Below are positions 16,901 to 60,700 of a stretch of DNA of 64,000 nucleotides, in pieces (within the stretch, counting starts at the first letter, position 1; every line of letters begins with the position of its first letter). Below the pieces are notes generated by a model. That model was not told the origin of the DNA and did no database searches. It worked only from the letters and a program-made list of their open reading frames with translations. The stretch comes from Podarcis melisellensis. Lineage: Eukaryota. The stretch lies in the NCBI GenBank assembly GCA_964234715.1, contig OZ174275.1; one strand, given 5' to 3'. Position numbers and translations under genes: made by a program.

Positions 16901-19020
16901 CATAGAAATCCAGTGCCTATAATAGATTTCAGTTGGAAGCTGTATACAAGACTTTCAAGGATGTGAACTTCTGCCAGTGATAGCTCAAATAGGTAGAAAA
17001 TAGAAAGGAACCCATTTTTCCTTTTTATTTTCTACCTATTTGAGCTATCAAATAGGTAGAATCAAATAGGTAGAATAGCTATCAAATAGGTAGAATATTT
17101 GAGTGCATCCCATTCCCACAATAAGCTTTGGGTGAACAGAAGAGTATATTTTGTCAGAGTGCATTAATTCATTTCTTGCCCAACACTTTCATTCAGTGTG
17201 TTTATGTCAATAATAGGCAAAATGTGTAAAAAAAATTAGGAACTTGGTGTTTCCACCTCAAATTGTGGTTTAAAGGTAAAGGTAAAGGTACCCCTGCCCG
17301 TACGGGCCAGTCTTGACAGACTCTAGGGTTGTGTGCTCATCTCATTCTAGAGGCTGGGAGCCAGCGCTGTCCGCAGACACTTCCGGGTCACGTGGCCAGC
17401 GTGACGAAGCTGCTCCGGCGAACCGGCACCAGAGCAGCACACGGAACGCTGTTTACCTTCCCACTAGAAAGCGATACCTATTTATCTACTTGCACTTAAT
17501 TGTGCTTTCGAACTGCTAGGTGGGCAGGAGCTGGGACCGAACGACGGGAGCTCACCCCACCACGGGGATTCGAACCGCCGACCATGCGATCAGCAAGTCC
17601 TAGGTGCTGAGGTTTTACCCACAGCGCCACCCGCGTCCCTTCACCAGTGTCCCACCCCAAATCATAGTTCCACACATGCAGGAGAATGTTATCTAGAGAT
17701 GACAGACTCATAGACTCATATCCAATGCAAGTTTTTTAAACACAGGACACTGTCAAATGTGTTGGTCTAAGCCATTGCCAATGATAGCCAAACACGCATA
17801 GAAAAGAATAAAGAACTGGGGAAGGGATGCAATAAACTTTGGTATATCACAAATCATACACCCACATCTGCAGGATGGTACCCTCTATCGGACAGCATAG
17901 AATCACGTCAGGCCCAATGCTTTTTGGAGTAGCAAGGTGCTATCAATTGCATGGGTCTACACCAATAATTGTCAAAATATGTACAACTCTATTGCTGGAT
18001 GTGTGAGTATATGGTTTGGTGGTTCCTAAGTTCCATATTATTTTTTTACACATTTTGGTTGTTGTTGGCATAGTTTCACACCACACAGTTTCTTGTGTCC
18101 AAGCACTGTGTTGCTAGACCAATTTGGGTATAACCATTGTGGTGGTCCAAAGCAAGTTTGGGTTGCACAAACCCAGTTCCTTATTCTTTTCTACATTTGT
18201 TGGCTATTAATTATTTGTTATATTAGAATAATATAATTTCTAAAATTGGCTATCATTGGACTACCTAAAAATTTATAATCTGACATAAATTTTATGGATG
18301 TCATTCTTCATGAGATAGGTGCTGCAGCAGAGTGACAGACAGTCATTTTGGAAAATAGCTTCTGCAGACATGTGCTAATGTGCACATGATGTTTACTGAT
18401 GTTTCCTCTTTCTGAACTATTTTCTATGTCATCCAAGTGGAAATTGCTTTCAGTAATGACTTTCCTCCTGAAATTTATTACAGTGGTACCTCGGGTTACA
18501 TACACTTCAGGTTACATACGCTACAGGTTACAGACTCTGCTAATCCAGAAATATTACCTTGGGTTAAGAACTTTGCTTCAGGATGAGAACAGAAATCGTG
18601 CAGCGGCGATGCAGCAGCAGCAGCAGGAAGCACCATTAGCTACAGTGGTGCTTCAGGTTAAAAACAGTTTCAGGTTAAGAACAGACCTCCAGAACGAATT
18701 AAGTTCTTAACCCGAGGTACCACTGTATACGACACTGGTCTATAGTGTTGGACTTGGACCTTGAAAACTTTGAAATGTACTAGCATTTGGCACAATATGG
18801 CCTAGATCAGACATAGGCAAACTTGGCCCTCCAGATGTTTTGAGACTAGAATCCCCATCATTCCTGACCACTGGTCCTGTTAGCTAGGGATGATGGGAGT
18901 TGTAGTCCCAAAACATCTGGAGGGCCGAGTTTGCCTGTGCCCGGCCTAGATCAAGGGCCACTGACGAGTGCCAAGGCACCTGCAAAGGCTTTAACTGATG
19001 CCTCATATACTGAGCTTTCA

Positions 19021-22000: not shown

Positions 22001-24406
22001 TTGGAAGAAAATACAAAGATTGATGTCAGGTATCTTTTTATCAAGACTAAAAAACTATCCTAAATAAAAACACAAAACAGAAAGAAAAAGAGAAAACAAG
22101 ATGAAGAAAAAAGGAGAAGAAAAGGGTGTGTGTGTGAGAAAATGAGAACTTCTGATTCTTCATCTGTCAGCTATATGTAGAAAATTATTCAACACATCCA
22201 CTCCAAGATAAACACCCAACAAATCTGCTTTCAAGAAACCAAAGCCAAGGTTTCTTCATACTGTGTACCAAGGCATGTGTGAACAAGGCAATCCAACTTC
22301 TACAACAAGAAAATTCCAATCCTGTGCCCACACTCAGTTATTCGAGTAAATGTGTGGTTTATGTAGCACAGGCTTCCTCAATCTCAGCCCTCCAGATGTT
22401 TTGAGACTACAATTCCCATAATCCCTGACCACTGGTCCTGCTAGCTAGGGATCAAGGGAGCTGTAGGCCAAAAACATCTGGAGGGCCGAGGTTGAGGAAG
22501 CCTGATGTAGCATATACCTTCTCAGTTTTGATTACATCTGAATTAGTTCAGGAAGTTTGTTCAAAGTGCTGGCCTCTTTGATGAGTGTGGGGTGTACAGC
22601 AGAGGGAAAGCCAAATGCATGTATAGAAGTGTGATTTGAGGTGACATTGGAATGAGGACACAGATACTTTTGCACCCTGGAACTTTATGTGATCCCTGTC
22701 TCTTTCCAAAGTGTATATTTAAACACAAGAATAAGAGAAACACTAGTGGAAATAATACAAAAAGCTACCTGAGATTCTCACATATCAAATTTGGTACCAA
22801 CAACCCTGCCCAGAGCACCCTCCCCACCTGTTTTTTGAGTTTGCTCAGACTTTGGCGATTGCTTACTGGCAAAATATGTTACTATTCAAACCTGTTGGCC
22901 AGAGCTATGAGAGAGAAAGTTCCTCAGCAGAGGTGGACTGTGATCTGTTTCAGAACTCCCCCTTCCCCTGTTGCAATTTTGTCAGTTGGCATATGTCTTG
23001 GGACATCAAACAATGCAGATCTTCTGTAGTTGTGTGTGCACAGCTACATAGAACATGATAGCTCTGTGGTTAGAGCATGGTGCTGATAATACCAAGGTTG
23101 CAGGTTTGTGTTATCAGCGCCCTGCTCTAAACAAGTGAGCTATCATGCTCTAAGTGCTGAAGGCCAGGCTGCTGAAGGAAGTAACCTCTAGCATTTAAAC
23201 TGTCACACTTCACTTACTGCTTAGCTGAATTATATTTTTCTTCTTTCTCCTACAGTGCAGCCATTGGAGGAACCTAGAGGAGACAGGTAGGTTTGCTCTG
23301 TATTGTCTTCATAGCGGAGATGGTTCTTGCCACCCTTCTGCCTTGCCTGCTTTCTTTTACTCAGTATTTTGACCTGTGTCATGACCTGAAAAGTGCTTCC
23401 CCAAATGGGTTGTAGGGCTCCTTACTCATTTCCCTTCCTTAATGGGGTCAGGTTTGGTTCTGGTTTCGGTTTCTAGAAATTGGAAGTGTCGGACGGATGG
23501 ATGCCTTCTTCTCAGGATTTAATGGCATTTCAAGCCCAAGAGGAGGCGCTCAATTGTAGTCGTCACCTACTGGATGGATGTCTGTCCTGAAAATGCCACC
23601 TGAGGCTTAGGAGGCATGGGGTTCCAAGAAAGGAATGTAGGAAGGAATTAACAGTTGTGCTGTGGCAGTCATTTCATCAGCACAAGCTTTTCAGTTTCTC
23701 AGACAGAACAATCCCCCATCTCCCCCAGCCCTGGTCTGGGAGGGTCTCCTAATCTTCCCTGTGCTGATTTCCCTGTGGGGAGGGAGTCCTATTCCACAGG
23801 CAGAGATTCTTGTGCAAGTCCCTGTTAGCAGGACTAGTTAGTTGAATCATGCCCCTTTTGGGCGGGCTTCACCTAACCAGCCCCATTGGTGAAAGCCCTG
23901 CTCAAGAACTCTGCTTGTGGCTTTCCCTCCTCTTTTTCCCCCACCCCACAAATTGGCTCTGGGGGAGTTGGAGGAACCAATGAGGGGGAGAGGCAAGCTG
24001 AATTACTTGCACATATGGAACAATTGAAAGAGGTCAACATTTGGCCATAGCTTTGTTCCACAACAACTTTGATAGCTTTCTGTTAATACTGCCTGCAGGA
24101 AGTGATTCTCTGTTGCTTGTGGCAAGCGTACTTGGAAGGTCTACAGTACTGATACATTGTTTCCATCCCTGTAGTGACAGTGAGATGGCAAGAGCGCAGC
24201 CTCACCTGTTAAGTGTCCCAGAGCTCTGTCGTTTCCTGGCAGAGAGCTGGATTACCTTCAGATTGTACCTTCAGGAGCTGCTGCAATACAAGAGGCAAAA
24301 CCCTGCTAAGGTAAGCTGGGAGTCATCAGGCCCTCTCAGAAAAAATCCTAGAACATGGCTACTTTCCCCCATGGTGCCTTTGGGCCGTGGCTTGTTAACA
24401 CATACA

Positions 24407-24437
<31 letters not shown>

Positions 24438-27400
24438 TCAAATACATTTATTCAAATACAAATACATATTCACAGTTGCTCCTAGCACTTAGGGCTGCTT
24501 CACACTGGATTATTTTTCTACATGGATATTGCTTCAGTTTAAGAAAGGATGTGCATACACAACAGCATGTGGTATAAACGTTGTATTCCAAACAGCAATT
24601 TTAAGGGAGAAGAAGAAGAAGAAGAGTTTGATTTGATATCCCGCCTTTCACTCCCTTTAAGGAGTCTCAAAGCGGCTAACATTCTCCTTTCCCTTCCTCC
24701 CCCACAACAAACACTCTGTGAGGTGAGTGGGGCTGAGAGACTTCAAAGAAGTGTGACTGGCCCAAGGTCACCCAGCAGCTGCATGTGGAGGAGCGGAGAC
24801 TCGAACCCGGTTCTCCAGATTACGAGACTACCCCTCTTAACCACTACACCACACTGGCTCTTGATACTTGATAAGGGAATCAAGTATTCTTCACAATATA
24901 TGTGGAAACAAAAAATGGGAGTAGGGTTTTAATCAAGTATGCCAGTACAGACAAGGTTACAGTGTGTTCCAGAAACTATCCTGAGAAAAACAGCTGAGGG
25001 CAGACATACCCTTAGCCTGCACATACGTGTTGATGTTGCTTTGTAGATGTCACTTCCTTGTTTCTTTTTCCTCCGCTGTCACCCAGTTCTGTTTAGTAAT
25101 CCAAAATGCATAATGTGATATATTTGTGTTGCAACTCTGTTCTTGACATTTGTCTTTCATTGCAGAGGGGCATTTCTATGTGATGGCCTCATTCCTGCAT
25201 TGAAATGTGAGATTGTTGCTTGCAGCAGTTGCTCCATATAAGCAGTAAATGAGCAGTTCTGGCCCTGAGCAGAATTCAGATTTTAATGCTGTAGTGTCTG
25301 GGATTTATGAGCATAGATGGCAAGCAGCTCTCTCTATTGATTAATTAATGGCCTGTCCTTGGAGGAGAAAGCATTACCTTATATTATATAGTCAAGATCA
25401 GTTAAAGGGAAGGCAGGTAGAGAGGGAAGTAATGTATGGGCCTTATTTTATCTCAGGATGAGGGAAGTCCTGAAATCTGTTCCAGTCACCTTTTGCCAGT
25501 GGCAAATTTCTTCCATTTCCATTGACAGCCTTAATAGTGAATCAAACACATACTCTTTTCAGAGGGTTGGGATTGGCATAGAAAAAGTCAGGCTTTTTCC
25601 TCTTGTAGTCAGCTATTTGCCCATTTGTCAGTTACTTTCAGACATGCAGCTTGCTGTTGCAGGTACTTCTGGATCCCCACCCGGCTCTGTTATAACACTA
25701 CTTGGCAGCAGCACCCAGGAGAAAAAGAGTAGCCTATCGTTCTGGCATGGCAGATGCACAAAGCATGCAAAATGGCTGTGTGGTGAATACAAGCAGTTAT
25801 TAATTAAAACAAGGTTCTCTGGGATTGGAGGCGTCTCTTGAGCCATTGCAAAGGTGGCTTATTCTGTGCTAAACCTTTCTTCTCTATCTTCTTTTGCCTT
25901 GTACTTCCAGTTTTGTGCCAGAGTCTGCTCAGGATGCTTGATCTTAGCGATAGTAGGACACTATGTTCCTGGAATCATGATTTCCTACATTGTCTGTGAG
26001 TATAACTGGACTGTTTTATCCCTTAAAACTAGACATGTGACTTAACTAAGCATATGCCCAGGAATTTTCTTTATCCAGCTCATTTAAAAGAAATTAAGAG
26101 CACATAATAGTTCCGACACCTTGTGGGGAACAGGGACACAGATTGAATTTAATGAGGTGCAGCTGGTGGAGGGCTGGACACTGAGTAATCTTTGGAAAAT
26201 TGGCTGCTTCTTTGTCTCTGAGAATATATGCTTCTAACACTTTCTGGACTGTCTCCAGTGCTCAGTATCTTGCTGTGGCCGCTGGTGGTGTACCATGAAC
26301 TTATCCAGAGGATGTACACACGCTTGGAGCCCATTCTGATGAAACTGGACTACAGCATGAAGGTGGATACCTTGCATCTCAAACACGAAAAGAAAAGTAA
26401 GACAACAGCTCCACAGTACCTGAAATGCATAGCTTTTGATGATAGGATGCAGGATGTAAGTCCCAGCAAGTAAAAATTAGAAACTCGGCTGTCTAGCTAG
26501 GAGCATTCAGTCCAGTGGGGTGAGGTCCAAAATCACTGGAGATGGCTGGATTTTAATTTGCATTAGTGTCCGGTACAGTGATACCTTGGGTTACAGACCC
26601 TTCAGGTTACAGACTCCGCTAACCCAGAAATAGTACCTTGGGTTAAGAACTTTGCTTCAGGATGAGAACAGAAATTGTGCGGTGGTGGCGCGGCAGCAGC
26701 AGGAGGCCCCATTAGCTAAAGTGGTATCGTGGGTTAAGAACAGTTTCAGATTAAGAACAGACCTCCAGAATGAATTAAGTTCTTAACCCGAGGTACCCCC
26801 GTACTGTGAGGAAGCACGGTCTGTATGAAGCTTCTGATAAAATATTCCCCTGGTCCTCTTCTTATAGGACTAGTTTGACTGATGTCCCATTAAGCATTTT
26901 ATATATGTTTTCTAACAGAGCGTCAAGGAAAGAGTGAGCCCGAAGCTGGCAATGAGCCGATGGCAGAGACTGAAAGTGAGAGTGAGGCGGAGCTATCTGG
27001 GTATTCTCCAGTGGTAAGAGCATGGGAAGGGATGCATGTTGGTGTTGAGCTTCATTCCTAATAATTCATTTCTTTCAAGTGATGTGAGTTTGCCTGCAGG
27101 GTTGGAAGGTCTGAGATCTTGTACTTGTTCCCTTCATAAAGGCTACTGTATTCAAGCTGACTTAGGAACTTGCAGGTTTTGGAGGGCCTTCGTCCCCCAC
27201 CCTCACCCCTTTGGGCCTTGCCTTATCTTCTCAACACTATTATCACCAACTGCTCTTTTTTGTCATTGTTACCACCTTTGTGCTTGCTGGGCAAAGAGCC
27301 AGTGAACAAGCAGGTATTGGCATCTGTTGCCCCTCCTCACTTTCCCAGTGGTCTTGACCACTGCAAAAGGCAGGTGAACAAGGAGATTGCAATGATGAAG

Positions 27401-30400: not shown

Positions 30401-32090
30401 TTTTCCCAATGCAGTGGTGTCGGTTAAAACAGAAAGGAATTGTGATGGGCTTCAAAAGGAGAAGTAGACATTAAAATGGGAAATGCAATTAAATGTAAGC
30501 AATGTAAGATTATGCATGGTGTAGAGAAAGAGAGGTGTTTCTCATAATACAAAAATCTGAGGACATGTAATGAAGCTTCATGTTAGAAGACTCAGAACAG
30601 ACAAGAGGAGGTTCACATAGCACATACCGTAGTTTAAACTATGGAATTAGTTCCAGCAAGACGTAGTAATGGCCACCAATGTGGATGGATTTCAAAGACA
30701 AATTTCTGGATGATAAAGCTATCAATGGCTGCTGGCCACAATGGCTTTGTTCACCATCCACTAGTGTGTCTGAATTCCAGTTGCTGGGAGTTCCAAGTGG
30801 GAAGAGTGCTGTTTCGCTCATGTCCTGCTTGTGGATTTCTCATATGAGAACAGGATGCAGGACTAGATGGGGCTTAGGTCTGATTCAGCAAGCCTGTTCT
30901 TATGTTTTTATTGCCCCCATATTGTAGTGCAGGGGGCAGGAGTGAGAATGAGATAGTGGTGGTATATCTAAAGCACCTAATGAGTACATGGCAAAAGTGA
31001 GATTCAAACCAAGGAATTCCTGATTTGTACACTCTTCATAGCCACTACGATACACAGCTTTCATACATCAGCATTAACGTGCATGATACTGCATACATTT
31101 ACCAACTCAGATTTGTTCTGGTGAGATGATTGAACAAGAAAGAAAAGCAGTAGCAAGATCATAGTGGGGTTGGTGACTTTTAATCAGGGAGTACAGCTAT
31201 AGAACAGCAGCAACTGACCTGTTAATGAGAGAATAGGAAAGAACATTTCTGTGCAAGGTCAGGATAAGATGATAAGGAGGCACACAAAGGCAAGTACAGT
31301 AAGTGTATTCAGAAAACAGACTGGCAGCTGAGCTTGGAATGGCAATTGATGATTGAGAACAGGGAATTCTGGGGTATTTGAGGAGGCCATGTTCATACTC
31401 CCAATATGCTTTTCAGATCTGGACCAGCAGAGCCTTCCCAGTGAGCCAGAAGAGTCCTTCTCCAAGGACTTGGCAGAGTTTCCTTCTGTGGAAGAGTTTC
31501 ATTCCAGAGACTTGGGACCACCCAGTGACAACTTTGCAGTGCCTGCCCACACTGCCCACCAACTGGACTCGGCTGAGAAAGACGGCGTGGCGGCAGCAGC
31601 CATGAGTTCAGACACATCCATCCTGTGCCTGGCCTCACCCCTGCACTTTGTAAATACGCACTTCAACGGGAACGGGCAGGCAGTGGCAGGAGGAGCCCTG
31701 GAGCCCCAACCTGTCACTGCCCAAGGCCTGGGGCTGCACATCGATTCACTGAGCCAAGAGATTGTCACCACCGCTATCAGTACAGTAGTGCAGAACACCC
31801 TGTCAGCCCTGCTCCGCTCCTCTGAGGACAACGAGGGGCCTTCTCTCTCTGAGTTCCTGCCCACTGAGCCCGAGGAGAGACTGAGCTTCCAGGCCCAGCT
31901 GTCTGAGAGTGCGGAGGTGGGGGCGGCCTCTCTGCCTGGGGAGGAGGAGGAGGAGGAAGCTGATGATTTTGAGCTGCTTGATCAGAGGGAGCTGGAGCAG
32001 ATGGATGCAGAGCTTGGCCTTTCTGGAGAGACAGAGGCTCAAGCGACACCAGCTCTCCCTCCTGAAGAAGAATCCTTGCCCAGCTCCTAG
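13348..32090 (+). CDS. RETREG2: Reticulophagy regulator 2 (FAM134A), ER-phagy receptor, 552 aa, 9 exons
   Basis: Exons: 13348-13604 ([18 protein letters not shown]..), 19184-19290 ([14 protein letters not shown]..), 23256-23286 ([11 protein letters not shown]), 24175-24310 (..[30 protein letters not shown]), 25911-25995 ([28 protein letters not shown]), 26259-26396 ([35 protein letters not shown]), 26919-27013 (..[16 protein letters not shown]), 28096-28231 ([30 protein letters not shown]..), 31417-32090 (..DDFELLDQ..*). GT-AG, in phase, 1659 nt. Reticulon-homology domain plus C-terminal LIR. Confidence 0.96.
13668..13735 (+). repeat. (GC)n run followed by a 26-bp tandem duplication
   Basis: gcgcgcgcgcgcgcg, then ggggagggggtgttgctcgcgtgcgt twice. 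Confidence 0.85.
16978..17103. repeat. 33-bp inverted repeat plus tandem 14-mer copies
   Basis: Arms 16978-17010 and 17018-17050 (one mismatch); tcaaataggtagaa recurs at 17048, 17062 and 17082. Confidence 0.9.
17272..17639 (-). mobile_element. Sauria SINE, full length
   Basis: On the - strand: gggacgcgggtggcgctgtgggtaaaacc head, B-box ggttcgaatccc, body aagtagataaataggta, (ACCTTT)n tail. Confidence 0.88.
18481..18725. mobile_element. Tc1/mariner (Tigger-like) MITE
   Basis: TIRs CAGTGGTACCTCGGGTTA / TAACCCGAGGTACCACTG with TA target duplication on both sides. Confidence 0.88.
18808..18943. mobile_element. hAT-type palindromic MITE
   Basis: Near-perfect 136-bp fold-back (ggccctccagatgtttt..aaaacatctggagggcc) with 8-bp TSD gcctagat at 18800-18807 and 18944-18951. 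Confidence 0.88.
19021..19057 (+). repeat. (TAAG)9 microsatellite
   Basis: taagtaagtaag.. read directly. Confidence 0.95.
22369..22504. mobile_element. hAT-type palindromic MITE
   Basis: caggcttcctcaa..ttgaggaagcctg with perfect 8-bp TSD atgtagca at 22361-22368 and 22505-22512. Degenerate relatives at ~7015-7090, 9803-9935, 43750-43890, 44115-44240, 49905-50026 and 53140-53245. Confidence 0.88.
23054..23147. repeat. Fold-back inverted duplication of a tRNA-Ile-like (SINE head) fragment
   Basis: catgatagctctgtggttagagcatggtgctgataatac / gtgttatcagcgccctgctctaaacaagtgagctatcatg with a 15-nt loop. Confidence 0.75.
24400..24436 (+). repeat. (TACA)n microsatellite
   Basis: catacatacatacata.. 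followed by degenerate units. Confidence 0.9.
24608..24860 (-). mobile_element. tRNA-derived CORE-type SINE (Squam3-like) with L2-type 3' end and (TTC)n tail
   Basis: On the - strand: gagccagtgtggtgtagtggttaag (A box), gggttcgagtctcc (B box), CORE-like gggtgaccttgggccagtcac, 3' gttagccgctttgag..ggcgggatat, then ttcttcttc. Family name is from recall. Confidence 0.8.
26576..26801. mobile_element. Tc1/mariner MITE, same family as 18481-18725
   Basis: TA-CAGTGATACCTTGGGTTA..TAACCCGAGGTACCCCCG-TA; shares internal gggttaagaactttgcttcaggatgagaacagaaat. Confidence 0.85.
28868..29223. mobile_element. Degenerate hAT-like non-autonomous element
   Basis: ggagtggtcaaccttttt start and ctggcctcc..cctgag end; block cagccaggcaaaaacactcaa shared with ~35600-35620; related pieces at ~48255-48340 and 62155-62300. 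Confidence 0.5.
29650..30910 (+). mobile_element. Old, internally deleted CR1 LINE remnant
   Basis: ORF1 esterase-like [11 protein letters not shown] (~29671-29703), ORF2 [27 protein letters not shown] (30058-30201), [10 protein letters not shown] (~30249-30278), CR1-type 3' end ggactagatgg..ctgattcagcaagcctgttcttatgtt. Confidence 0.75.
31962..31979 (+). other. RETREG2: LC3-interacting region (LIR) DDFELL of RETREG2
   Basis: GAT GAT TTT GAG CTG CTT = DDFELL, the canonical FAM134-family LIR, preceded by an acidic E6 run. Confidence 0.9.
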
Positions 32091-34416: not shown

Positions 34417-34843
34417 AAAGGTTCAAAGATGTGAATTTTGGGTTAAAAGTTCTAACTCTTCATCTTATCCAGTCACCCAGAAACCCCGCCTTTCTCAATT
34501 TCCCAGGTATCCCTGATGCACTGGGATCTGGCAGCCATTTTAAGCCTATGTCCAGATGGTTATTACCCTAGTTATGGTCTTTCCTGATAGTATTCAGTAT
34601 TCCATTGCACATGCTTTGCACGCCATTGTTGGCTCAAATTCGGGAAGTTATGTCCAGTGTTCAGTAACTGCTGTAGGTGAGCAGCTGGCACAACCTTGAA
34701 CTGAAGGCAAGATGGCAGTAATGCTACACGAGCCATCATATCCTTTAGTATCTTCTCAGTTCCAGTTCTCACAACCACCCAAAGTTGTAGTAAGCATGTG
34801 CCTTGTACTATGTCAGGATCCAGGTGGGAATACACACAATTGC

Positions 34844-34932
34844 GTCTACGGCCATACTACCCTGAACACGCCCGATCTCGTCTGATCTCGGAAGCTAAGC
34901 AGGGTCAGGCCTGGTTAGTACTTGGATGGGAG
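34844..34932 (+). pseudogene. 3'-truncated 5S rRNA retropseudogene (nt 1-89) with 17-18 bp target-site duplication
   Basis: gtctacggccatactaccctgaacacgcccgatctcgtctgatctcggaagctaagcagggtcaggcctggttagtacttggatgggag matches recalled vertebrate 5S nt 1-89 with about 3 substitutions. Flanked by gggaatacacacaattgc at 34826-34843 and 34932-34949. No 3' end, no poly(A), no T-run terminator. Confidence 0.92.
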
Positions 34933-36233
34933 GGAATACACACAATTGCATGCTGTACCATACAGTTTGGTTTGTTGTTGAAAACTAGTGCATTTGGAGT
35001 GAAGAATAGAACTTTGCTCTTCATGCTAATGGACACGACAGCTTGAGGTGGTTTCTTAATGCTGCTGTTCCCCTTTATTGCCTCTCATTTAACAGCTACC
35101 CTAAGGTAACTGAGAAGTCTGTAAAGCCTATTAACAGCAGGTGTCATTTGAGGTTGGATAGCTGAGTAAATTAAAGGAATAGAGATACAGCTATAACTCT
35201 CCTAACTCATCTAACCTAAGTTCTTCCATGCAATGTGGAAACCGTTGTCAGTTCAGCTTCCTTTTCTGCTAGATTCTCAAACCAAGATGATTAATCCAGT
35301 TTAGCTGCTTTTGATTCTATGGGCTCTACACCTAGTGTTCCCGGAGTTCAGCCCCTATGCACAGCAAAGATAGACTTTCCAAACAAATGGTGCTAAGCTT
35401 GCAAAATTAGTTTACTACAGGTGCATTGGGTTCTTCAGCATATATGGTTTTCAGCCCATGGACTGCATTCCATTCAGGCAGGCTTCCAAGGACCACATGC
35501 TAGTGCTGGTGATTGTAAATTTTAACTTTGAACTGTAGGTTCTTTCTATCCTACATCCAGGCAAGCAAATGGCATTATCACAATGCTAGGGACACATTTC
35601 AGCCAGGCAAAAACACTCAAGCAGGGCTGCTAAGAAGAGTCCTAAGGATTGGATAGTGAGGCTTGGTGGATTGCATTTCGGGCCCGAGCCTGAGTTTTCT
35701 TATCTCAGACACACTGCGTGATACAGTAGCTCTCACAAAAGCCTGCTTTTATTTGAGTGTAAGATTATGGCTCACATATCCACATTTATGCAGAAGTAAG
35801 CCCTACAATGTTCAGCATAGCTTGTTTACAGCTGAATGTGTTTAGAATTGCAACCTTACTTTTTTCATTTGTACATTCCCCCACTAATTCCCAACACAAA
35901 TATGGAAGATAATTTTTCATGTTCAATTTTGTAACAAATGTTTCAAGTTAGGTAGATTATGTGGCAAAATGTTCATATATTTTCTGCATCTAAGTGTGTT
36001 TTTGGCATAGGGTGTAATTCAGTGTAGCACTTAGTGGTGTAGGTATGCATGAAATGAGGTCCCCAATCCTCTAGCACAAATTTTAGGGGAAGAGGGAGTT
36101 CTGTTGCATGAATGGATGCCATTCTGCACCCACAACTTATTTTTTAAGACCTCTGGGTGGGATTCAACTCTCTTCCACCAATTGCCTCTAGGCTACATCC
36201 ATATGGAGGAACATGAGAGAAAACAAACCAGGT

Positions 36234-36944: not shown

Positions 36945-39900
36945 TCAGGCACTGTGTGCAGGCTGCAGAAGGTGGATCAATTTCTTACAATGCCTTGATG
37001 ATGAGGGCCGTGGGCTGCTGTAGGCACTAGTCTGAGGTTTGTTACATGAAAGTGCTTCCAACTTTTCACTTGCTCCGAGTGACACCAGCACCTGGAAAGG
37101 AGATTAGGACAGATATATGTTGTGCCCTGGCATAGCCTATTGTGCTAAGCTATGTAGGGCATTAGCACAATTACTTAGAGAGGGCCTGTGTTTTTAATCC
37201 TGCATCCAACATCACTTCCGCATTATCAGGACACTGTGCTGGGATTTCCATCTACTGCAAGTAATGCACAGCTGATTGAGGAATATGTTATGTTGGGGAT
37301 GGGACTGAAAACATTACCCCTTTTGAGTAATTATGGTAACTCCCTCAATGTGAATAACACAGCAATAGGATTCTATAGAGAGCCTCATAACTCCAGTGTA
37401 TCTTCAACGTCTGGTACTGAGAAAGATGTCATTCTGACAGAGCTGTTCAATAGTGGAACGAACAGACTCCCATGAGAGGTGTTGGACTCTCCTTCCTTGG
37501 AAGTTGTTAAACGGAGGTTGGATGGCCACTTGTCACATATGATCTAGTTGAGATTCCTGCATTGTAGGGAGTTGGGCTAGATGACCCTCAGGAACCCTTT
37601 CGACTTTACAATTCTATGGTTCTTGGGGAACACAGTCATGTTTTCATAGAAAGGGGACTAGCAACTTAGGGTTGTATTCAGTGTACTATCAGTGCAAGGC
37701 CTTTTGGCTGTGCAAAGTAACTCCCCTTCCTCCCTGCAAACCCTCTAAATCTGTTAAGGGGCTTCCACAGCCATCCAAAGCAAATTTGGGGAAGGTGTGA
37801 GGTGCACAAGAATCAAGGACAGTTCCATTGCACAAATGCCAATCCTTGCACTAACAGAGCAAGTGCATTGGATACCACCCTTACACATAAAAAGTGATGA
37901 TTGTAACTAGGTAAAGGAAGAATGAGATCTACTGTTGGATGATCTAATATAAGCTCAGGGACACTTGGAACCAACAAAGTTATCATGCAAAAAACATGTA
38001 TTCCTTGAGAATCCAGAGGTGTGATAGTTTGGAGCTCACTTATGTGCAACTGTTTTTGAAAGAATGGAACAGGTTGAATTATATTGATAACTGCTAATTA
38101 AGATGACAAAGCAAGTCAGCTATCACACAATGACTGTTTGTAAAGTGCTTCTCTCATAGAAAGGAAGGGTCAAGAGAATATGGCAGCTAATAGCAGCAAT
38201 GAACTCTCAAGCCCCCCTGCCAACAAGAACCTACCAATGTCATTTTCCTTTTTTGCCCCAATGTACAAACCTCAATTCTTGACCAGCAAGCAAAGCTTCA
38301 TTATCCTCAACAACCACGGCAGATAACCTTGCAATAAGGCTTCCGTTATGCATTGTCAGGAATTAACTGAAGCACAATAAATCTGACTGCTGGTTTTTTT
38401 AGGGCCTGCCCTCAGCTCGCCAAGACTTTTCCCTCCACAGTTGCTGAACTAATACCTGGTGGATCCTGGGCTGCTGGCCCATAGATCGAAGAGCAATGAG
38501 TGCTGCCTCTTGCACAGCTGGTTGCGAATCATGGCAGGCCACATCCAATAGACGACCTGGTACCCTGCTCTGGATCAGCAAATCTTCCAGTTCCACCGAC
38601 TGGCGGCCCAAGTTGCCCAGTGCTGAAGCTGCATTACAGCGGGTCTTGGCTTGCGGATCACTCAGGAGCTGAACAACCCAAGGGACTGCTTTGCTGAGGG
38701 CTGGAGTAAGAGGGCCAGCCTGGTAGGCTGCATTGCCAACAGCAAAGCTGGCTGAGCGTCGCACATGTTCGTCCTCATCCGAAAGGCATTCCAGCAGATG
38801 TTCCAGCAGCCCAATCTGGTCCTGCAGAACCTGAGGAAACCCCTGTCTGTGGCGCAGCAAGTTCCCCAAAAGGCTGCAAGTTTTGGCACGAACCGGGCAT
38901 TCTTGGTGGCACAGCAAGTGGCTCAGTGGTTGGGAAGCAGAGTCTGAACCACATAGGAGTCTCTGTAGGAAAGGCAAGTGAGCTGGACTGGCCCGGGCTA
39001 TGTGGGTGAGCAGAGAGAGCAAGTCTGCAGTAAGGGCTACTTGGTCTGATAGCAAAATGGCAGACAAGAAGGCAACAGCATGCTTTGAGGCAGCCACCCC
39101 CACCACCTGCTCAATGACTCCCTCGTCGCTCAGCACCAAGTGGCACAGGAGACTCAATGGCAACTCTGTCTCTGAGAAGGGAAGGTGGTGAATGCAGGCC
39201 TACAAAGAAAGCAAAAGCAGAATAGTGTCTCAAAGTGTGCATACCAGTATGAAGTTGGCAACAACAAAGTTGTGTTTGTGCAAAGACTTCTGCTTATGCT
39301 ATGGAACTTACTTTCCTCACCCTAGCCACAAAATCTATTTGTAGCCTTTCTACAAACTGGACAACTTTGTTGGACATAACTCTGAACCTTTATCATTTTA
39401 AAAATGTTTCCCATAAAGGGTAAAAATTCCTTTATGTCTTTATGAGACTGGCATTTCCATCCCTTCCCCAGCCTACAACCCCCTTCAAAAAAGGCATTTG
39501 GTGCCTTGTTTTATGAAAAGCAGTTTTTTGAGTGCATCCACATAAGCACAACCACCATGAATCAGGTTGAAAGGCATTGCTTTGTGTGGAGCAGGGCAAC
39601 TGGTCTGGCTAAGGCAGAGTCTGCATCTAGTGCTTAGACGACCAACATGAGAAAAGGTTTACCTGGAGTAAACGTGCAGGGATTTCAGAGTCCCTTAGAC
39701 CTGTTGTAATAAGCTCTAAAGTTTCAGGGTCCATGTCCAGAGCAAAGGGGAAACACAACAGCTGGCAAATTTGGAGCACAACAGCTGATACCAGCTCTGG
39801 GTCACCATCCTCTTGCATCTGCCTGGAAGAGGGAAGAAAGTCGTCAAAGTGAGGTGTTAACTTCCAGCTGTAAGTATATTTGGGCTGCAATAGTAAGCTC

Positions 39901-42159: not shown

Positions 42160-42210
<51 letters not shown>

Positions 42211-45200
42211 TATTATTATTATTATTATTATTATTTATTATTTATACCCCGCCCATCTGGCTGAGTTTCCCCAGCCACTCTGGGCGGCTCCCAATCAGTG
42301 TTAAAAACAGTACAGCATTACATATTAAAAACTTCCCTGAACAGGGCTGCCTTAAGATGTTTTCTGAATGTCAGGTAATTCTTTATCTCTTTGACATCTG
42401 ATGGGAGGGCGTTCCACAGGGCGGGCGCCACTACCGAGAAGGCCCTCTGTCTGGTTCCCTGTAGCCTCACTTCTCGCAATGAGGGAACCGCCAGAAGGCC
42501 CTCGGCGCTGGATCTCAGTGTCCGGGCTGAACGATGGGGGTGGAGACGCTCCTTCAGGTATACAGGACCGAGGCCGTTTAGGGCTTTAAAGGTCAGCACC
42601 AACACTTTGAATCGTGCTCGGAAACGTACTGGGAGCCAGTGCAGATCTCTCAGAACCGGTGTTATGTGGTCCCGGCGGCCACTCCCAGTCACCAGTCTAG
42701 CTGCCGCATTCTGGATTAATTGCAGTTTCCGGGTCACCTTCAAAGGTAGCCCCACGTAGAGCGCGTTGCAGTAGTCCAAGCGTGAGATAACTAGAGCATG
42801 CACCACTCTGGCGAGACAGTCCGCGGGGAGGTAGGGTCTTAGCCTGCGTACCAGGTGGAGCTGGTAGACAGCTGCCCTGGACACAGAGTTAACCTGCGCC
42901 TCCATGGACAGCTGTGAGTCCAAAATGACTCCCAGGCTGCGCACCTGGTCCTTCAGGGGCACAGTTACCCCATTCAGGACCAGGGAATCCTCCACACCTG
43001 CCCGCCTCCTGTCCCCCAAAAACAGTACTTCTGTCTTGTCAGGATTCAACCTCAATCTGTTAGCCGCCATCCAACCTCCCACCGCCTCCAGGCACTCACA
43101 CAGGACCTTCACCGCCTTCACTGGTTCTGATTTAAAGGAGAGGTAGAGCTGGGTGTCATCTGCATACTGATGAACACCCAGTCCAAACCCCCTGATGATC
43201 TCTCCCAGCGGCTTCATATAGATATTAAAAAGCATGGGGGAGAGGACAGAACCCTGAGGCACCCCACAAGTGAGAGCCCAGTGGTCTGAACACTCACCCC
43301 CCCCCACCACTTTCTGGACACGGCCCAGGAGGAAGGAGCGGAACCACTGTATGACAGTGCCCCCAGCTCCCAGCCCCTCTAGACGGTCCAGAAGGATGTT
43401 ATGGTCGATGGTGTCAAAGGCCGCTGAGAGATCCAGCAGAACTAGGAAACAGCTCTCACCTTTGTCCCTAGCCCGCCGGAGATCATCAACCAGCGCGACC
43501 AAGGCAGTTTCAGTCCCATGGTGAGGCCTGAATCCCGATTGGAAGGGATCCAAATGGTACATACATAGCAAATTGTAGATAAGAATAGTGCAATGTCCTC
43601 AACTGTATTTTTTTTAACTTTCAAATTCTGTAGAAAGAACTGAGCCACCTAGCCAGGAAATATGCTTGGAAATTATCATATCTGTATAACTATGTTAGCA
43701 AATTGGGTTGTTTAGGTCCAGTTCTAGACGGTACTGTCTTTCTCTATCTCAGTGTTACCCAACCTGGTGCCCTCCAGATGTTTGGAACTCCACCTCCCAT
43801 CAGTCCCAGTTAAGTGTAGATTAGAAAATGGTTGGGGTGATGACAATTGTGGCCCAAAACATTGAGGATGCCAGGTTGGGGAGGGCTGCTCCGTCCTTTG
43901 ACCCAAAGTGGCCCTTCCAACTTCCAAGGAAGTCCATGAACAGACAGGACAGCACCTGGATGAGAGCCAGTTCCCTACTGCCAAGAGCTGAGGGGCTACA
44001 CACGGCCTTGGCGGAATAAAGCAGGCCATTGCTTACCCTACCCCATTCTGCTTCACCTAACAGCAAATACTTTCCCTAATACCTCCTGGATCATTTGTGT
44101 ACATCCTCTTGAGCAGCCTTTACCAACCAGGTGCCCCCAGATGTTAGACCATAACTGTTTGTTGGACCACATGCTGGCTGGGGCTGATGGAAATTACAAT
44201 CTAGCAACATCTGGAGGTCACCAGGCTGGCCAGTGCTGCTCTAAAGAATGCAAGGGAGCTGCTTGGTGGGGCATGAAGTCATACCTGGCTTAATAGCTGC
44301 AGCATCAAGAGCAGGAGCCCATCATAGAAGCCAGCTCCCATGGGAGGTGGCAGGCATAGCTGAAAGACACCAAGAGAAAGGACTAGACCCGAGACAGTGA
44401 CCTCAAAGTCAGCCACTATATGGCATGACAAGCATGACACAGCCAGTGGCCTATGTGTCCTGATTTGCCCCTGTCTGCCTGGAGCTGGTTTCTTACCTCC
44501 GCAGGTTCTGTGAATACAGTAGCTATAATGGCCATGGCTTCCTCTTGCCTGAGCATCACAGCAGCGCCATTTTGAATGAAGTATGTCAGCAGCAATCCTG
44601 CAGCACTCTGCATAAGAGAGAGAGACCCCTCTGTGTGCAAGAATGGCCAGAATGCCTTCTTTACTTGCACTAGATGCAAATCTAGTTATTAGACTCCCTG
44701 CAGGAATGGGAATGCTGCTTTCTCCTTCATAGTCTACAGAAGTCCAACTCCGATACCTCTGATATGACAGGGTAACAGGCAGACCATGCCATTTCTTTGC
44801 AGTCCAGAAGTATCTAGTACAGTGGTGCCCCGCAAGATGAATGCCTCACAAGACGGAAAACCCGCTAGATGAAAGGGTTTTCCGTTTTGGAGGTGCTTCG
44901 CAAAACGAATTTCCTATGGGCTTGCTTTGCAAGACGAAAATGTCTTGCGAGTTCCTGCGGGGTTTTTTTCCTCCCCCCCGCTTTTTCCCAAGCTGCTAAG
45001 CCGCTTATCAGCTGATCCGCTAAGCCCGCTAAACCGCTAATAGCGTTAATCCGCTAAGGCGCTTCGCAAGACGAAAAAACCGCAAGACGAAGAGACTCGC
45101 GGAACGGATTCTTTTCGGCTTGCGAGGCACCACTGTACACACTTGTGGGACATGTGTTTTTCACAGCTTGTGAAGCTCTGTCTACAATACCTCCAACTGT

Positions 45201-57700: not shown

Positions 57701-60700
57701 GGCCAATCCTGTTCCTCCTCGCCCTTTGGTCTTCTAGCAGGTTTTTTTTTTTACAAACTCCTTATGAAAAACTGTAGATAGAGAAATAAATGCCTTCTCT
57801 TTACCGCACAGTTACCTGGCTAGAAGCATATGCCAACTGAGATCTCTTCTCAGTCAGCTGCTGTTATGCCACTGGTTCCTTGTGGATATTATGAAAAAAT
57901 ACTCCATGCAACAATCTCACTCTCGGTTAGTATTACAGCTGTGTTTCTGCCCTTTGCAGTATGGAGCTGTGTCGTTTTTTCAGCCACAGAATCAAAACAG
58001 AAAGAAAGTGACAGCCTTTCTCACGCATGGTAAACTACCCACTGTTGTGGGAATTGTGTGTAAGGTAAAATTCTGAGAAGTAGCCAGAGAGAAATGTTTT
58101 TGTGGTTTTCATTATCACTGGCAGCAGCAAAGGTCTGCTAGTTTAGACTTTGTGCCCCTTCACAAGTGCCTGTCCTCTTAAGTGTTTTAGTGGCATTTTT
58201 AAAATTTTTAAAAGCTGAGCATCAGCTAATGCATAGGAGTTCAATCCTGATTTCTATCTGCCCCACACATAACATCATACATGATGGACTGGAGAAACTT
58301 GAGGAAATTAGCCTTATGTATCATATTAATATATTTTTTCCTTACTCAGGGCTCTGCCTTCAGAAGTGGAAGTCTTAGAGTCCATCTACTTGGATGAGCT
58401 ACATGTGTCTAAAGGAAATGGAAGGTAATTGCAACATTGTCAGATCCTTTGCTGGTTCTTTGTTTTATGGTATTGATCACTCCTGTGATCTTGCATATGT
58501 CATTGTGGAACCTGATTCCTGGTTTAGAAGACTGTACCCTGTTTTTGGATTAGACTACAGTGTCCTGCACAAACTCGGAATGAATTGCAACCCCTGATTC
58601 ATGTTTGTTAATTTCCCAAAATATTAGTCACTTCTTTATTCCCCTCCTTGTATTTGATACTACCATTCTGAAATAGTTATCTTTGTAAGAATATGGGGTG
58701 GGAAGAATGAAAGGTCTGCATTATGCCTGCTTCAATCTCCTTTCAGCCTGAGAAAGGAAGGAATAACAACCCACCTGCATTATCTCTCCTGTTCCATCTT
58801 CCTTTCATTTGACACCAGACTCTCACTTGAGCCTCTCTTCAACCCTAGGTCTGTGCCGTGGGAAATATCTATCACCCTTCATCCAGCAACTGCAGAGGAC
58901 CAGGAGTCTCAGTATGTCTGCTTAACCTTGGTGCTATCCGTGCCTCTTCAGGTAAAGCCTTGTATGTCCTGAGTGGCTATTTTGCTATGTAGCACTTTAG
59001 CATGGCTGTACTGCTCATTTTGACTTGGCTTTGTTTCTTATTAGTATCCAAATGAAGTGCCAAAGATAGCCATCCAGAATCCTCGAGGGCTGTCAGATGA
59101 GCAAATCCAAAAGTAAGTGTATTATGCAAACTCTTTCCAGTTCAGTGCAAGAAGTAAGGTTTTCTTTGTTTCAGTCTGTCACACTTTTAATGGAAAGTGT
59201 GGGGAGGTGGGAGCTTCTTTATATTGTGTTCCAGCTGCCCAATGATCTTATGTGGAATATATATTATGCAGCTGTTCTCTTAATTTAGAGCTGTGCTATG
59301 AAGGCTGTTGCTATGTTACTAACATTGGGAGCATGGGGAATGAGGTTACAAACAAGACTGGAAGTTCTAATCATGTAATCAACATGTTTGGGTACATATA
59401 AATTAATTATGGTGTTTGTGTGTAAAATTGGCATTGGGGGAATACATGTTAAAGGAGATCTTTCCCTTAAATGTTATTGATAGGTGAACAAAATTAAGAG
59501 ATGAGAGTCAATGCATCTTGGTACATTACTGTATCAGAAAGGCAGCATCTTCATCCAAAACAAAGTCCCAGCTTCTGTGGCTCTTTACACGTGGCTTACT
59601 AGAACCTGCTTTCCCTCCCCTGCTTTCCCTTCCCCTAGAAGGGCTTCAAGCTGCTTTTTCAATTTTAGTCTGGTACCACTTCCTTCTAATTTGTACTGAA
59701 GTACCTACTGTGTCAGATGAGATACTGGGTGAGAGGCTGGAGCCCATCCTGTGTTGGTGTTGAGATTGCTATTGCAAGTGGCTGATTTAGCCACTCCAGT
59801 TCTTGTCATCTTATTTCCCTGGACATCTATTCTAGTCTTTCTCCTTACCCTGCCCCCCTTTTTGCCTCCATTTTAGGATTTCCCAGACACTACAATTTAC
59901 TGCTGAGGCCCAGCTGGGTACAGCTATGTTATATGAGCTAATAGAGGTAAGAGAACAGAAAGGGCTGTTGGACCTGTGGCTTGGGCTGTTGCGCCTTTAT
60001 TGTGTGAAATGACAAATTGACCCTCTCTGTCTTCACAGAAGGGAAAGGAAATCCTTACAGACAACAACATCCCTCATGGGCAGTGTGTGATTTGCCTGTA
60101 TGGCTTCCAGGTACGGGCATGCTGGATTGGCATCTTGTTTTCATTTGTGGGGAGCCATAGGAAATAAAAGCACTAATATAAGGAGGTAGATGAATGAGGT
60201 GAAGCTGGGGCTCACTCAAAAAGGAAGGAAGAGGGAATGGGAACTTGTTGGGATGTCTCTAGATCCCTTCCTTAGTGCTGTGTTGCATTCAGTTCTGCAA
60301 AAGTGTGTGCATGTGTCCCCATAGTGGGAAGGGGAGTAACAGTGGGAATGGGGTGCAAAAAGGCCCTGTTAATGTGATTGTTTGAATCTGAGCCAGCAGC
60401 CACATATATTACCGTATTTTTCGCTCTATAAGACGCACTAGACCACAAGACGCACCTAGTTTTTGGAGGAGGGAAACAAGAAAAAAAAAATCTGAATCTC
60501 AGAAGCCAGAACAGCAAGAGGGATTGCTGCACAGTGAAAGCAGCAATCCCCCTTGCTGTTCTGGCTTCTGGAATAGCTGTGCAGCCTGCATTCGCTCCAT
60601 AAGACGCACACACATTTCCCCTTACTTTTTAGGAGGGAAAAAGTAAGTCTTATAGAGCAAAAAATTCAGTACATATGAATTGAATTGAAATTGCATTGAA

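What the first reader, a model, noticed from the sequence alone, without database searches (positions are those of the whole stretch)
34825..34949. Tailless 5S rRNA retrocopy whose target site matches the 5S RNA itself
Seen: 5S nt 1-89 begins exactly at the mature 5' end, has no poly(A) or microsatellite tail, and sits between perfect direct repeats gggaatacacacaattgc (17-18 bp). The empty target begins TGGGAATAC (34825-34833), identical to recalled 5S nt 96-104, so the 3' junction reads as 5S with an 8-nt skip (GACCGCCT). Known: tailless, internally primed retropseudogenes of structural RNAs are described mainly as L1 products in therian mammals. Inference: the nicked target annealed to 5S nt 97-104 and primed reverse transcription. 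The site lacks the L1 TT/AAAA consensus, so a different squamate LINE (e.g. RTE/BovB, the Sauria SINE partner) may be responsible. The perfect TSD and about 3 substitutions suggest a recent event. Box A, the IE and most of box C remain, between two converging 3' ends.
Basis: partly seen in the sequence, partly recalled or inferred. Interest (0 to 1): 0.7.

Follow-up and report, generated by a model that had tools for sequence, protein, structure and literature searches.

The report
Tailless 5S rRNA retrocopy in lizard
A wall-lizard genome carries a young, 88-base reverse-transcribed copy of 5S ribosomal RNA without a poly(A) tail, flanked by a perfect 18-base duplication. This kind of pseudogene is already catalogued in mammals and in the anole lizard, so it is a tidy example with one odd junction, not a new kind.

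Summary
Window 34844-34931 (+) is 5S rRNA nt 1-88 (Rfam 62.5 bits). It starts exactly at nt 1, has no A-tail, and sits between perfect 18-bp direct repeats (34826-43, 34932-49) found nowhere else in the window. T34825 plus the first 8 repeat bases equal 5S nt 96-104 in both printed mammalian and Anolis 5S sequences, so nt 89-96 are skipped.

It fits the published class of tailless retropseudogenes (Noll et al. 2015). That paper already lists 555 5S-derived copies in human and 8 in Anolis carolinensis. The ~88-91 nt endpoint (loop D) is a known hotspot.

The copy differs from the Anolis 5S consensus only at nt 15 and 64, which pair with each other. Its source was therefore probably an intact lizard 5S variant, and decay is close to nil.

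- Annealing at nt 97-104 should give nt 1-96, not 1-88.
- Microhomology at the real junction is 1 nt.
- The site matches neither the L1 nor the BovB target signature.

This is a new member of a known kind, of modest interest.

The parts
34825..34825 (+). T just upstream of the 5' repeat; extends the identity between the target and 5S nt 96-104 to 9 nt
   Evidence: one search compared with printed 5S sequences
34826..34843 (+). 5' copy of the 18-bp target-site duplication; its first 8 nt equal 5S nt 97-104
34844..34931 (+). 5S rRNA nt 1-88 (nt 89 G is shared with the next repeat): helices I (5' strand), II, III, loops A-C, the 5' strand of helix IV and the start of loop D. It differs from the Anolis 5S consensus only at nt 15 (34858) and nt 64 (34907), which pair with each other.
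   Evidence: cmscan (62.5 bits)
34932..34949 (+). 3' copy of the 18-bp target-site duplication. cmscan aligns its first bases to the 5S 3' domain after an 8-position gap.
31353..32090 (+). Context: ORF taken as the last coding exon of RETREG2 (a reticulon-homology exon lies at 24041-24577). Its stop is 2.7 kb upstream of the insertion.
Evidence: The exon assignment is inferred.
38399..39163 (-). Context: last coding exon of STK36 (HEAT/ARM repeats). Its stop is 3.45 kb from the insertion, and the gene converges on RETREG2.
   Evidence: 97% identical to P. muralis STK36 XP_028597794.2

Best explanation
This is a one-off retrocopy of the lizard's own 5S rRNA, made by target-primed reverse transcription by a LINE-encoded enzyme. 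It belongs to the published class of tailless retropseudogenes.

Inferred sequence of events:
1. The minus strand of the RETREG2-STK36 intergenic DNA was nicked between window 34825 and 34826.
2. The freed 3' end, which is complementary to 5S nt 97-104, held a 5S RNA at the site.
3. cDNA synthesis began in loop D at nt 88/89, bypassing the 3' strand of helix IV (nt 89-96), and ran to the RNA's 5' end.
4. A second nick 18 nt away produced the duplication.

What is shown: the anatomy, the exact 5' end, the missing tail, the perfect 18-bp repeats, the 9-nt target/RNA identity and the loop-D endpoint. What is inferred: the RNA intermediate, the tethering step, the skip and the enzyme. The fragment is most likely inert. 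It lacks half of box C, helix I's partner strand and a nearby T-run terminator.
For: - It starts exactly at 5S nt 1, abutting the repeat, with no 5S gene flank. A Pol III transcript would give this; captured rDNA would not.
- It has perfect 18-bp direct repeats, within the 8-30 nt stagger quoted for TPRT.
- It has no A-tail.
- The endpoint at 88/89 lies in loop D. In published lists, 7 of 13 Tasmanian-devil copies are 87-91 nt, 14 of the first 49 cow copies are 87-92 nt, and one Anolis copy is 91 nt (my counts). 5S/L1 chimeras truncate at about nt 46 and 90, in loops C and D.
- The class is reported in a lizard: 8 5S and 63 U2 copies in Anolis.
- The insertion site is complementary to 5S nt 97-104. 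The class definition says the site matches the terminal 2-18 nt of the annealed RNA.
- The only differences from the Anolis 5S are a compensated pair, U15:A64. This points to a real 5S transcript as source and little decay.
- The flanks are unique in the window, and there is one 5S hit in 64 kb even at E<=1.
Against: - Insertion polarity and age therefore rest on anatomy alone.
- The nick site (minus strand ...TTCCC/ACCT...) matches neither the L1-type consensus TT/WAAAAWW nor the BovB Tn-TA signature, so the enzyme is unassigned.
- The complementarity is not adjacent to the point where copying starts. The 8-nt skip has no precedent in the papers I read.
- The species' own 5S sequence was not seen, so T15/A64 as the source state is an inference.
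Confidence: 0.72

Rival explanations
1. Same retrocopy, different start. The template was a 5S 5' fragment already cut in loop D (nt 1-88/89). The reverse transcriptase began at its 3' end without base pairing, and the target's identity to nt 96-104 is coincidence.
For: Microhomology at the real junction is only 1 nt. Loop C and loop D endpoints recur, and tRNA halves are thought to be used in L1 chimeras. 5S 3'-end fragments are studied as a product in PMC6962460.
Against: The chance of the 8-mer match is about 4e-4. Noll et al. looked for truncated 5S RNAs or A-tailed truncated copies in human and found none.
Confidence: 0.13
2. Ordinary internal priming at nt 97-104 gave a 5S 1-104 copy, and a later 8-bp deletion removed nt 89-96.
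For: It restores the textbook model, in which the site is complementary to the terminal 8 nt of the copy. cmscan reads the locus this way, as a 5S with an internal gap.
Against: The copy shows no uncompensated substitution and the repeats are perfect, so little time has passed. A deletion ending exactly at the repeat border with 1 nt of microhomology is unlikely, and it is not the 12-nt loss that slippage between the two GGGA blocks would give.
Confidence: 0.07
3. It is a fragment (solo head) of a multicopy 5S-headed SINE of this genome, not a copy of 5S rRNA itself.
For: Earlier unchecked notes report 5S-headed SINEs with a CR1-type tail in this genome (s1-515018, s1-515091).
Against: There is no SINE body or tail between the repeats. 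86 of 88 nt are identical to the Anolis 5S, and the two changes are compensatory. A SINE is normally 5'-truncated, not 3'-truncated. The 18-mer also lies upstream of nt 1, which a consensus would not explain. Genome-wide copy number was not testable.
Confidence: 0.05
4. A DNA-level event or artefact: a piece of 5S rDNA captured as filler at a staggered break, or an assembly chimera.
For: The target site is not LINE-like.
Against: The exact start at the transcript's nt 1 and the absence of spacer DNA argue for RNA. Contigs of three runs of the same organism hold 0.89-0.99 of the 3.2-kb stretch's words, although they may be the source sample.
Confidence: 0.03

Closest known systems
Tailless retropseudogenes of small RNAs (Schmitz et al. 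2004; Noll et al. 2015, PMC5322556), specifically the 5S rRNA-derived ones
   Same: It starts at the RNA's 5' end, is 3'-truncated in a loop, has no oligo(A), and has a perfect target-site duplication. The target is complementary to the RNA. The length falls in the 87-92 nt hotspot, and the class is already recorded in a lizard (Anolis, 8 copies).
   Different: The target is not the A/T-rich TT/WAAAAWW site. The complementary stretch (nt 97-104) is separated by 8 nt from where the copy ends. The host is a lacertid, for which I found no published catalogue.
5S/LINE-1 and U6/LINE-1 chimeric insertions (template switching or twin priming; bioRxiv 10.1101/2025.02.02.635956)
   Same: The 5S segment starts at nt 1 and truncates at loop C or loop D (about nt 46 and 90), and the insertions carry 7-15 bp duplications.
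   Different: No LINE 3' segment or poly(A) is attached here. The insertion is 5S alone.
5S rRNA-derived SINEs (SINE3, AmnSINE1, 5S-headed squamate SINEs)
   Same: They have a 5S-like head with box A and IE and are dispersed by LINE machinery.
   Different: Those have a LINE-related body and tail, are multicopy and have diverged heads. This copy is head-only, near-identical to real 5S, and single in the window.
BovB LINE / Sauria SINE insertions in squamates (PMC13295347)
   Same: The host group is the same, and the insertions are flanked by duplications.
   Different: The Tn-TA target signature and the microsatellite tail are both absent here.

Membership tests
Tailless retropseudogene (Schmitz 2004 / Noll 2015) | Derived from a cellular RNA and (for the small-RNA set) full-length at the RNA's 5' end | tested here: met
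   cmscan model position 1 is at 34844, directly after the repeat
Tailless retropseudogene (Schmitz 2004 / Noll 2015) | 3'-truncated and without an oligo(A) tail | tested here: met
   The copy ends at nt 88/89 of about 120, and the next base is the repeat
Tailless retropseudogene (Schmitz 2004 / Noll 2015) | Flanking target-site duplication | tested here: met
   18/18 perfect repeats, the only two copies in 64 kb
Tailless retropseudogene (Schmitz 2004 / Noll 2015) | Truncation at a loop or other single-stranded region, at recurrent positions | tested here: met
   The endpoint lies in the terminal hairpin loop of the 3' domain (structure line). It falls in the published 87-92 nt length class and at the loop D position of about 90.
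Tailless retropseudogene (Schmitz 2004 / Noll 2015) | Insertion site complementary to the terminal 2-18 nt of the annealed RNA | tested here: inconclusive
   An 8-9 nt identity to 5S nt 96-104 exists but is displaced by 8 nt from the endpoint. Adjacent microhomology is 1 nt.
Tailless retropseudogene (Schmitz 2004 / Noll 2015) | L1-type target consensus TT/WAAAAWW | tested here: not met
   The site reads GT/GGGAATAC on the plus strand. This is a statistical consensus in mammals, not required of each copy, and is unknown for lizard L1.
Tailless retropseudogene (Schmitz 2004 / Noll 2015) | Presence/absence at orthologous loci (a true insertion) | not testable with these tools
Flank ORFs are not in the protein collection.
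5S-derived SINE | 5S-like head joined to a LINE-related body and 3' tail | tested here: not met
   Nothing but 5S nt 1-88 lies between the repeats
5S-derived SINE | Multicopy family sharing the same consensus | not testable with these tools
   There is only one 5S hit in the window and the flanks are unique in the window.
BovB/RTE-mediated insertion | Tn-TA target signature and a microsatellite-like 3' end | tested here: not met
   The duplication starts with G, no TTT lies about 10 nt upstream, and there is no repeat tail
5S/LINE-1 chimeric insertion | A LINE 3' segment with poly(A) in the same insertion | tested here: not met
   the nearest LINE reverse-transcriptase ORF is 7.4 kb away

The most novel reading that the evidence does not exclude
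In lacertid lizards a LINE whose endonuclease does not need an A/T-rich site mobilises untailed Pol III RNAs in two separable steps. First the nicked DNA end base-pairs with an accessible stretch of the RNA (here loop E / helix V, nt 97-104). Then initiation occurs at a different, structurally exposed point (loop D), skipping the intervening helix strand. If recurrent, this would show that docking complementarity and the start of cDNA synthesis can be uncoupled in target-primed reverse transcription.
Probability: 0.1. Interest if true: 0.55.

Novelty: new member of a known kind. Interest (0 to 1): 0.3.

Why it matters
It adds a clean, apparently very young example of a tailless 5S retrocopy from a second squamate family. 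That supports the published prediction that lizards have a relaxed, trans-acting LINE system like that of therian mammals. Its non-A-rich target and the 8-nt gap between the complementary stretch and the copy's end are worth a genome-wide census. By itself, one locus does not change what is known. The fragment has no evident function, and it may serve as a presence/absence marker among wall lizards.

Tried and rejected

2. Orthologous loci through neighbouring genes.

3. Non-coding flank ORFs as handles. None is in the protein collection.

4. Paralogous empty sites. The flanks are unique in the window.

5. My first idea of a 4-nt GGGA microhomology at nt 85-88. I rejected it because both GGGA blocks are present in the product.

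6. A 21-bp duplication with one mismatch (family D1). I rejected it because the mismatched A34931 equals 5S nt 88, so it comes from the RNA.

7. L1 and BovB target signatures. Neither fits.

8. The left flank as an older 5S relic. There is no second 5S hit at E<=1, and 3 of 11 bases match upstream of T34825.

9. A literature search for lacertid 5S rDNA sequences gave nothing usable.

10. Earlier scan notes gave no record of tailless copies in this genome.

Full report
**What is there.** Window 34844-34931 on the plus strand is vertebrate 5S rRNA nt 1-88. Rfam's 5S model scores the locus 62.5 bits against a gathering score of 38, with E 9.5e-11. It is the only match above gathering in the 64-kb window and the only 5S match even at E<=1. 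Base 34844 is model position 1 and directly follows the last base of an 18-bp sequence (34826-34843). That sequence recurs perfectly at 34932-34949, directly after 5S nt 88. No third copy exists in the window with up to 3 mismatches. There is no A-run, microsatellite or 5S gene spacer at either border.

**Checking the recalled 5S letters.** Two papers print 5S sequences: mammalian 5S in PMC6962460, and a consensus for Anolis carolinensis in Table S9 of Noll et al. 2015, PMC5322556. In both, nt 89-96 read GACCGCCT and nt 96-104 read TGGGAATAC. Window 34825-34833, which is T plus the first 8 bases of the 5' repeat, is identical to nt 96-104. Under equal base frequencies, the chance that the first 8 bases of a duplication equal one of the 25 8-mers of 5S nt 89-121 is about 25/65536, or 4e-4. 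This is simple arithmetic and it is post hoc.

**State of the copy.**
- Against mammalian 5S there are three differences: nt 15 C>T, nt 25 G>A and nt 64 G>A.
- A25 is the state of the Anolis consensus, so only two differences remain against a squamate 5S.
- By the structure line, nt 15 and nt 64 pair with each other in helix II, and U15:A64 is not flagged as non-canonical.
- Two random changes landing on one pair and keeping it canonical is roughly a 1-in-100 to 1-in-250 event.
- I therefore infer that the source was a structurally intact lizard 5S variant and that the copy has decayed little or not at all.
- This could not be confirmed because the species' own 5S was out of reach.
- The perfect repeats alone only bound repeat divergence below about 17%.

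**Context.** The insertion lies between two converging genes.
- RETREG2 is on the plus strand.
- STK36 is on the minus strand. Its last coding exon is at 38399-39163 and is 97% identical to Podarcis muralis STK36 XP_028597794.2.
- An earlier follow-up calls this a wall-lizard genome.
- The flanks of the insertion are unique within the window.

**What it is.** The exact start at the transcript's first base, the absence of gene spacer and the 18-bp duplication are the marks of target-primed reverse transcription of an RNA. The missing tail and the 3' truncation place it in the class of tailless retropseudogenes (Schmitz et al. 2004; Noll et al. 2015). That class is defined by four features: 5'-complete and 3'-truncated copies of small RNAs, no oligo(A), truncation in loops, and an insertion site complementary to the terminal 2-18 nt of the annealed RNA.

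The published record bears directly on novelty:
- 5S-derived tailless copies number 555 in human and 8 in Anolis carolinensis. Anolis also has 63 U2-derived copies.
- The authors predicted a relaxed L1 system in lizards.

The endpoint is also a known hotspot:
- In Table S6, 7 of 13 Tasmanian-devil copies are 87-91 nt long.
- 14 of the first 49 cow copies are 87-92 nt, and another 20 are 40-43 nt (my counts).
- The Anolis copies are 91, 82, 53, 49, 43, 41, 38 and 37 nt.
- An independent preprint reports 5S truncation at about nt 46 and 90, in loops C and D, in 5S/L1 chimeras.

The present copy (88/89 nt) ends in loop D.

The duplication implies a minus-strand nick between 34825 and 34826. That leaves a 3' end complementary to 5S nt 97-104. 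If that end simply primed synthesis, the product would carry nt 1-96. It carries nt 1-88. Both GGGA blocks (5S 85-88 and the repeat start) are present, so microhomology at the real junction is one base, G89. I considered three ways out:
1. The DNA end tethers the RNA at nt 97-104, and synthesis starts in loop D, skipping the 3' strand of helix IV. I prefer this because it uses the improbable 8-mer match.
2. The template was already cut in loop D and the match is coincidence.
3. A normal 1-104 copy later lost 8 bp ending exactly at the repeat border.

Each requires something unlikely, and one locus cannot decide between them (note).

**Which enzyme.**
- The nick site does not match the mammalian tailless/L1 consensus TT/WAAAAWW.
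- It also does not match the squamate BovB/Sauria 'Tn-TA' signature.
- A lizard L1 remains the prior choice from the literature, but that is not shown.
- The nearest LINE in the window (reverse-transcriptase ORF 42318-43571, minus strand) is only distantly L1-like and has an (AAT)n tail. There is no reason to link it to this event.

**Rivals.** A solo head of a 5S-headed SINE is unlikely, although unchecked earlier notes report such SINEs in this genome.
- There is no body or tail between the repeats.
- The copy is 86/88 identical to the Anolis 5S, and the two changes are compensatory.
- The 18-mer also lies upstream of nt 1.

Genome-wide copy number could not be tested. DNA capture and assembly artefact are unlikely for the reasons given under rival explanations.

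**What could not be done.**
- The decisive test is an orthologous empty site. The look-up of sequencing runs showed that close relatives are available: seven coded organisms hold 0.41-0.99 of the sampled words.
- The look-up of encoding contigs, which could have fetched the P. muralis locus through STK36, was closed.
- Non-coding flank ORFs are not in the protein collection.
- The scan's earlier notes hold no tailless retrocopy for this genome.

**Verdict.** It is incomplete in mechanism and overstated in novelty. This is a new member of a known kind, with one unexplained junction detail. Interest 0.3.

Noticed in passing
window 42160-43571 (-): A LINE reverse-transcriptase ORF at 42318-43571 (Pfam RVT_1, E 9e-31) is only weakly similar to human L1 ORF2p (E about 1e-7). 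An (AAT)17/(ATT)11 microsatellite lies at 42160-42242 on its 3' side. This looks like a non-L1, microsatellite-tailed LINE.
   Followed up: partly
window 23052-23113 (+): An Rfam tRNA hit scores 32.7 bits in the permissive search, but ARAGORN finds no tRNA in the window. It is probably the head of a tRNA-derived SINE.
   Followed up: no
window 18834-18917 and 22395-22478 (both strands): Two copies of a palindromic hairpin match the mir-5408 model on both strands, far below its gathering score. This is likely a MITE-like inverted-repeat element rather than a microRNA. A similar hairpin lies at 60490-60578.
   Followed up: no
window 34868 (5S nt 25): A25 faces C52 in the stem that cmscan pairs as nt 25-26 with nt 51-52 and flags as non-canonical. 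The same A is in the published Anolis 5S consensus, so squamate 5S may carry an A-C opposition where mammals have G-C.
   Followed up: partly
window 38399-39163 (-): The last coding exon of STK36 is 97% identical to P. muralis STK36. This shows that the window comes from a close relative of P. muralis rather than from that species' reference protein set.
   Followed up: partly
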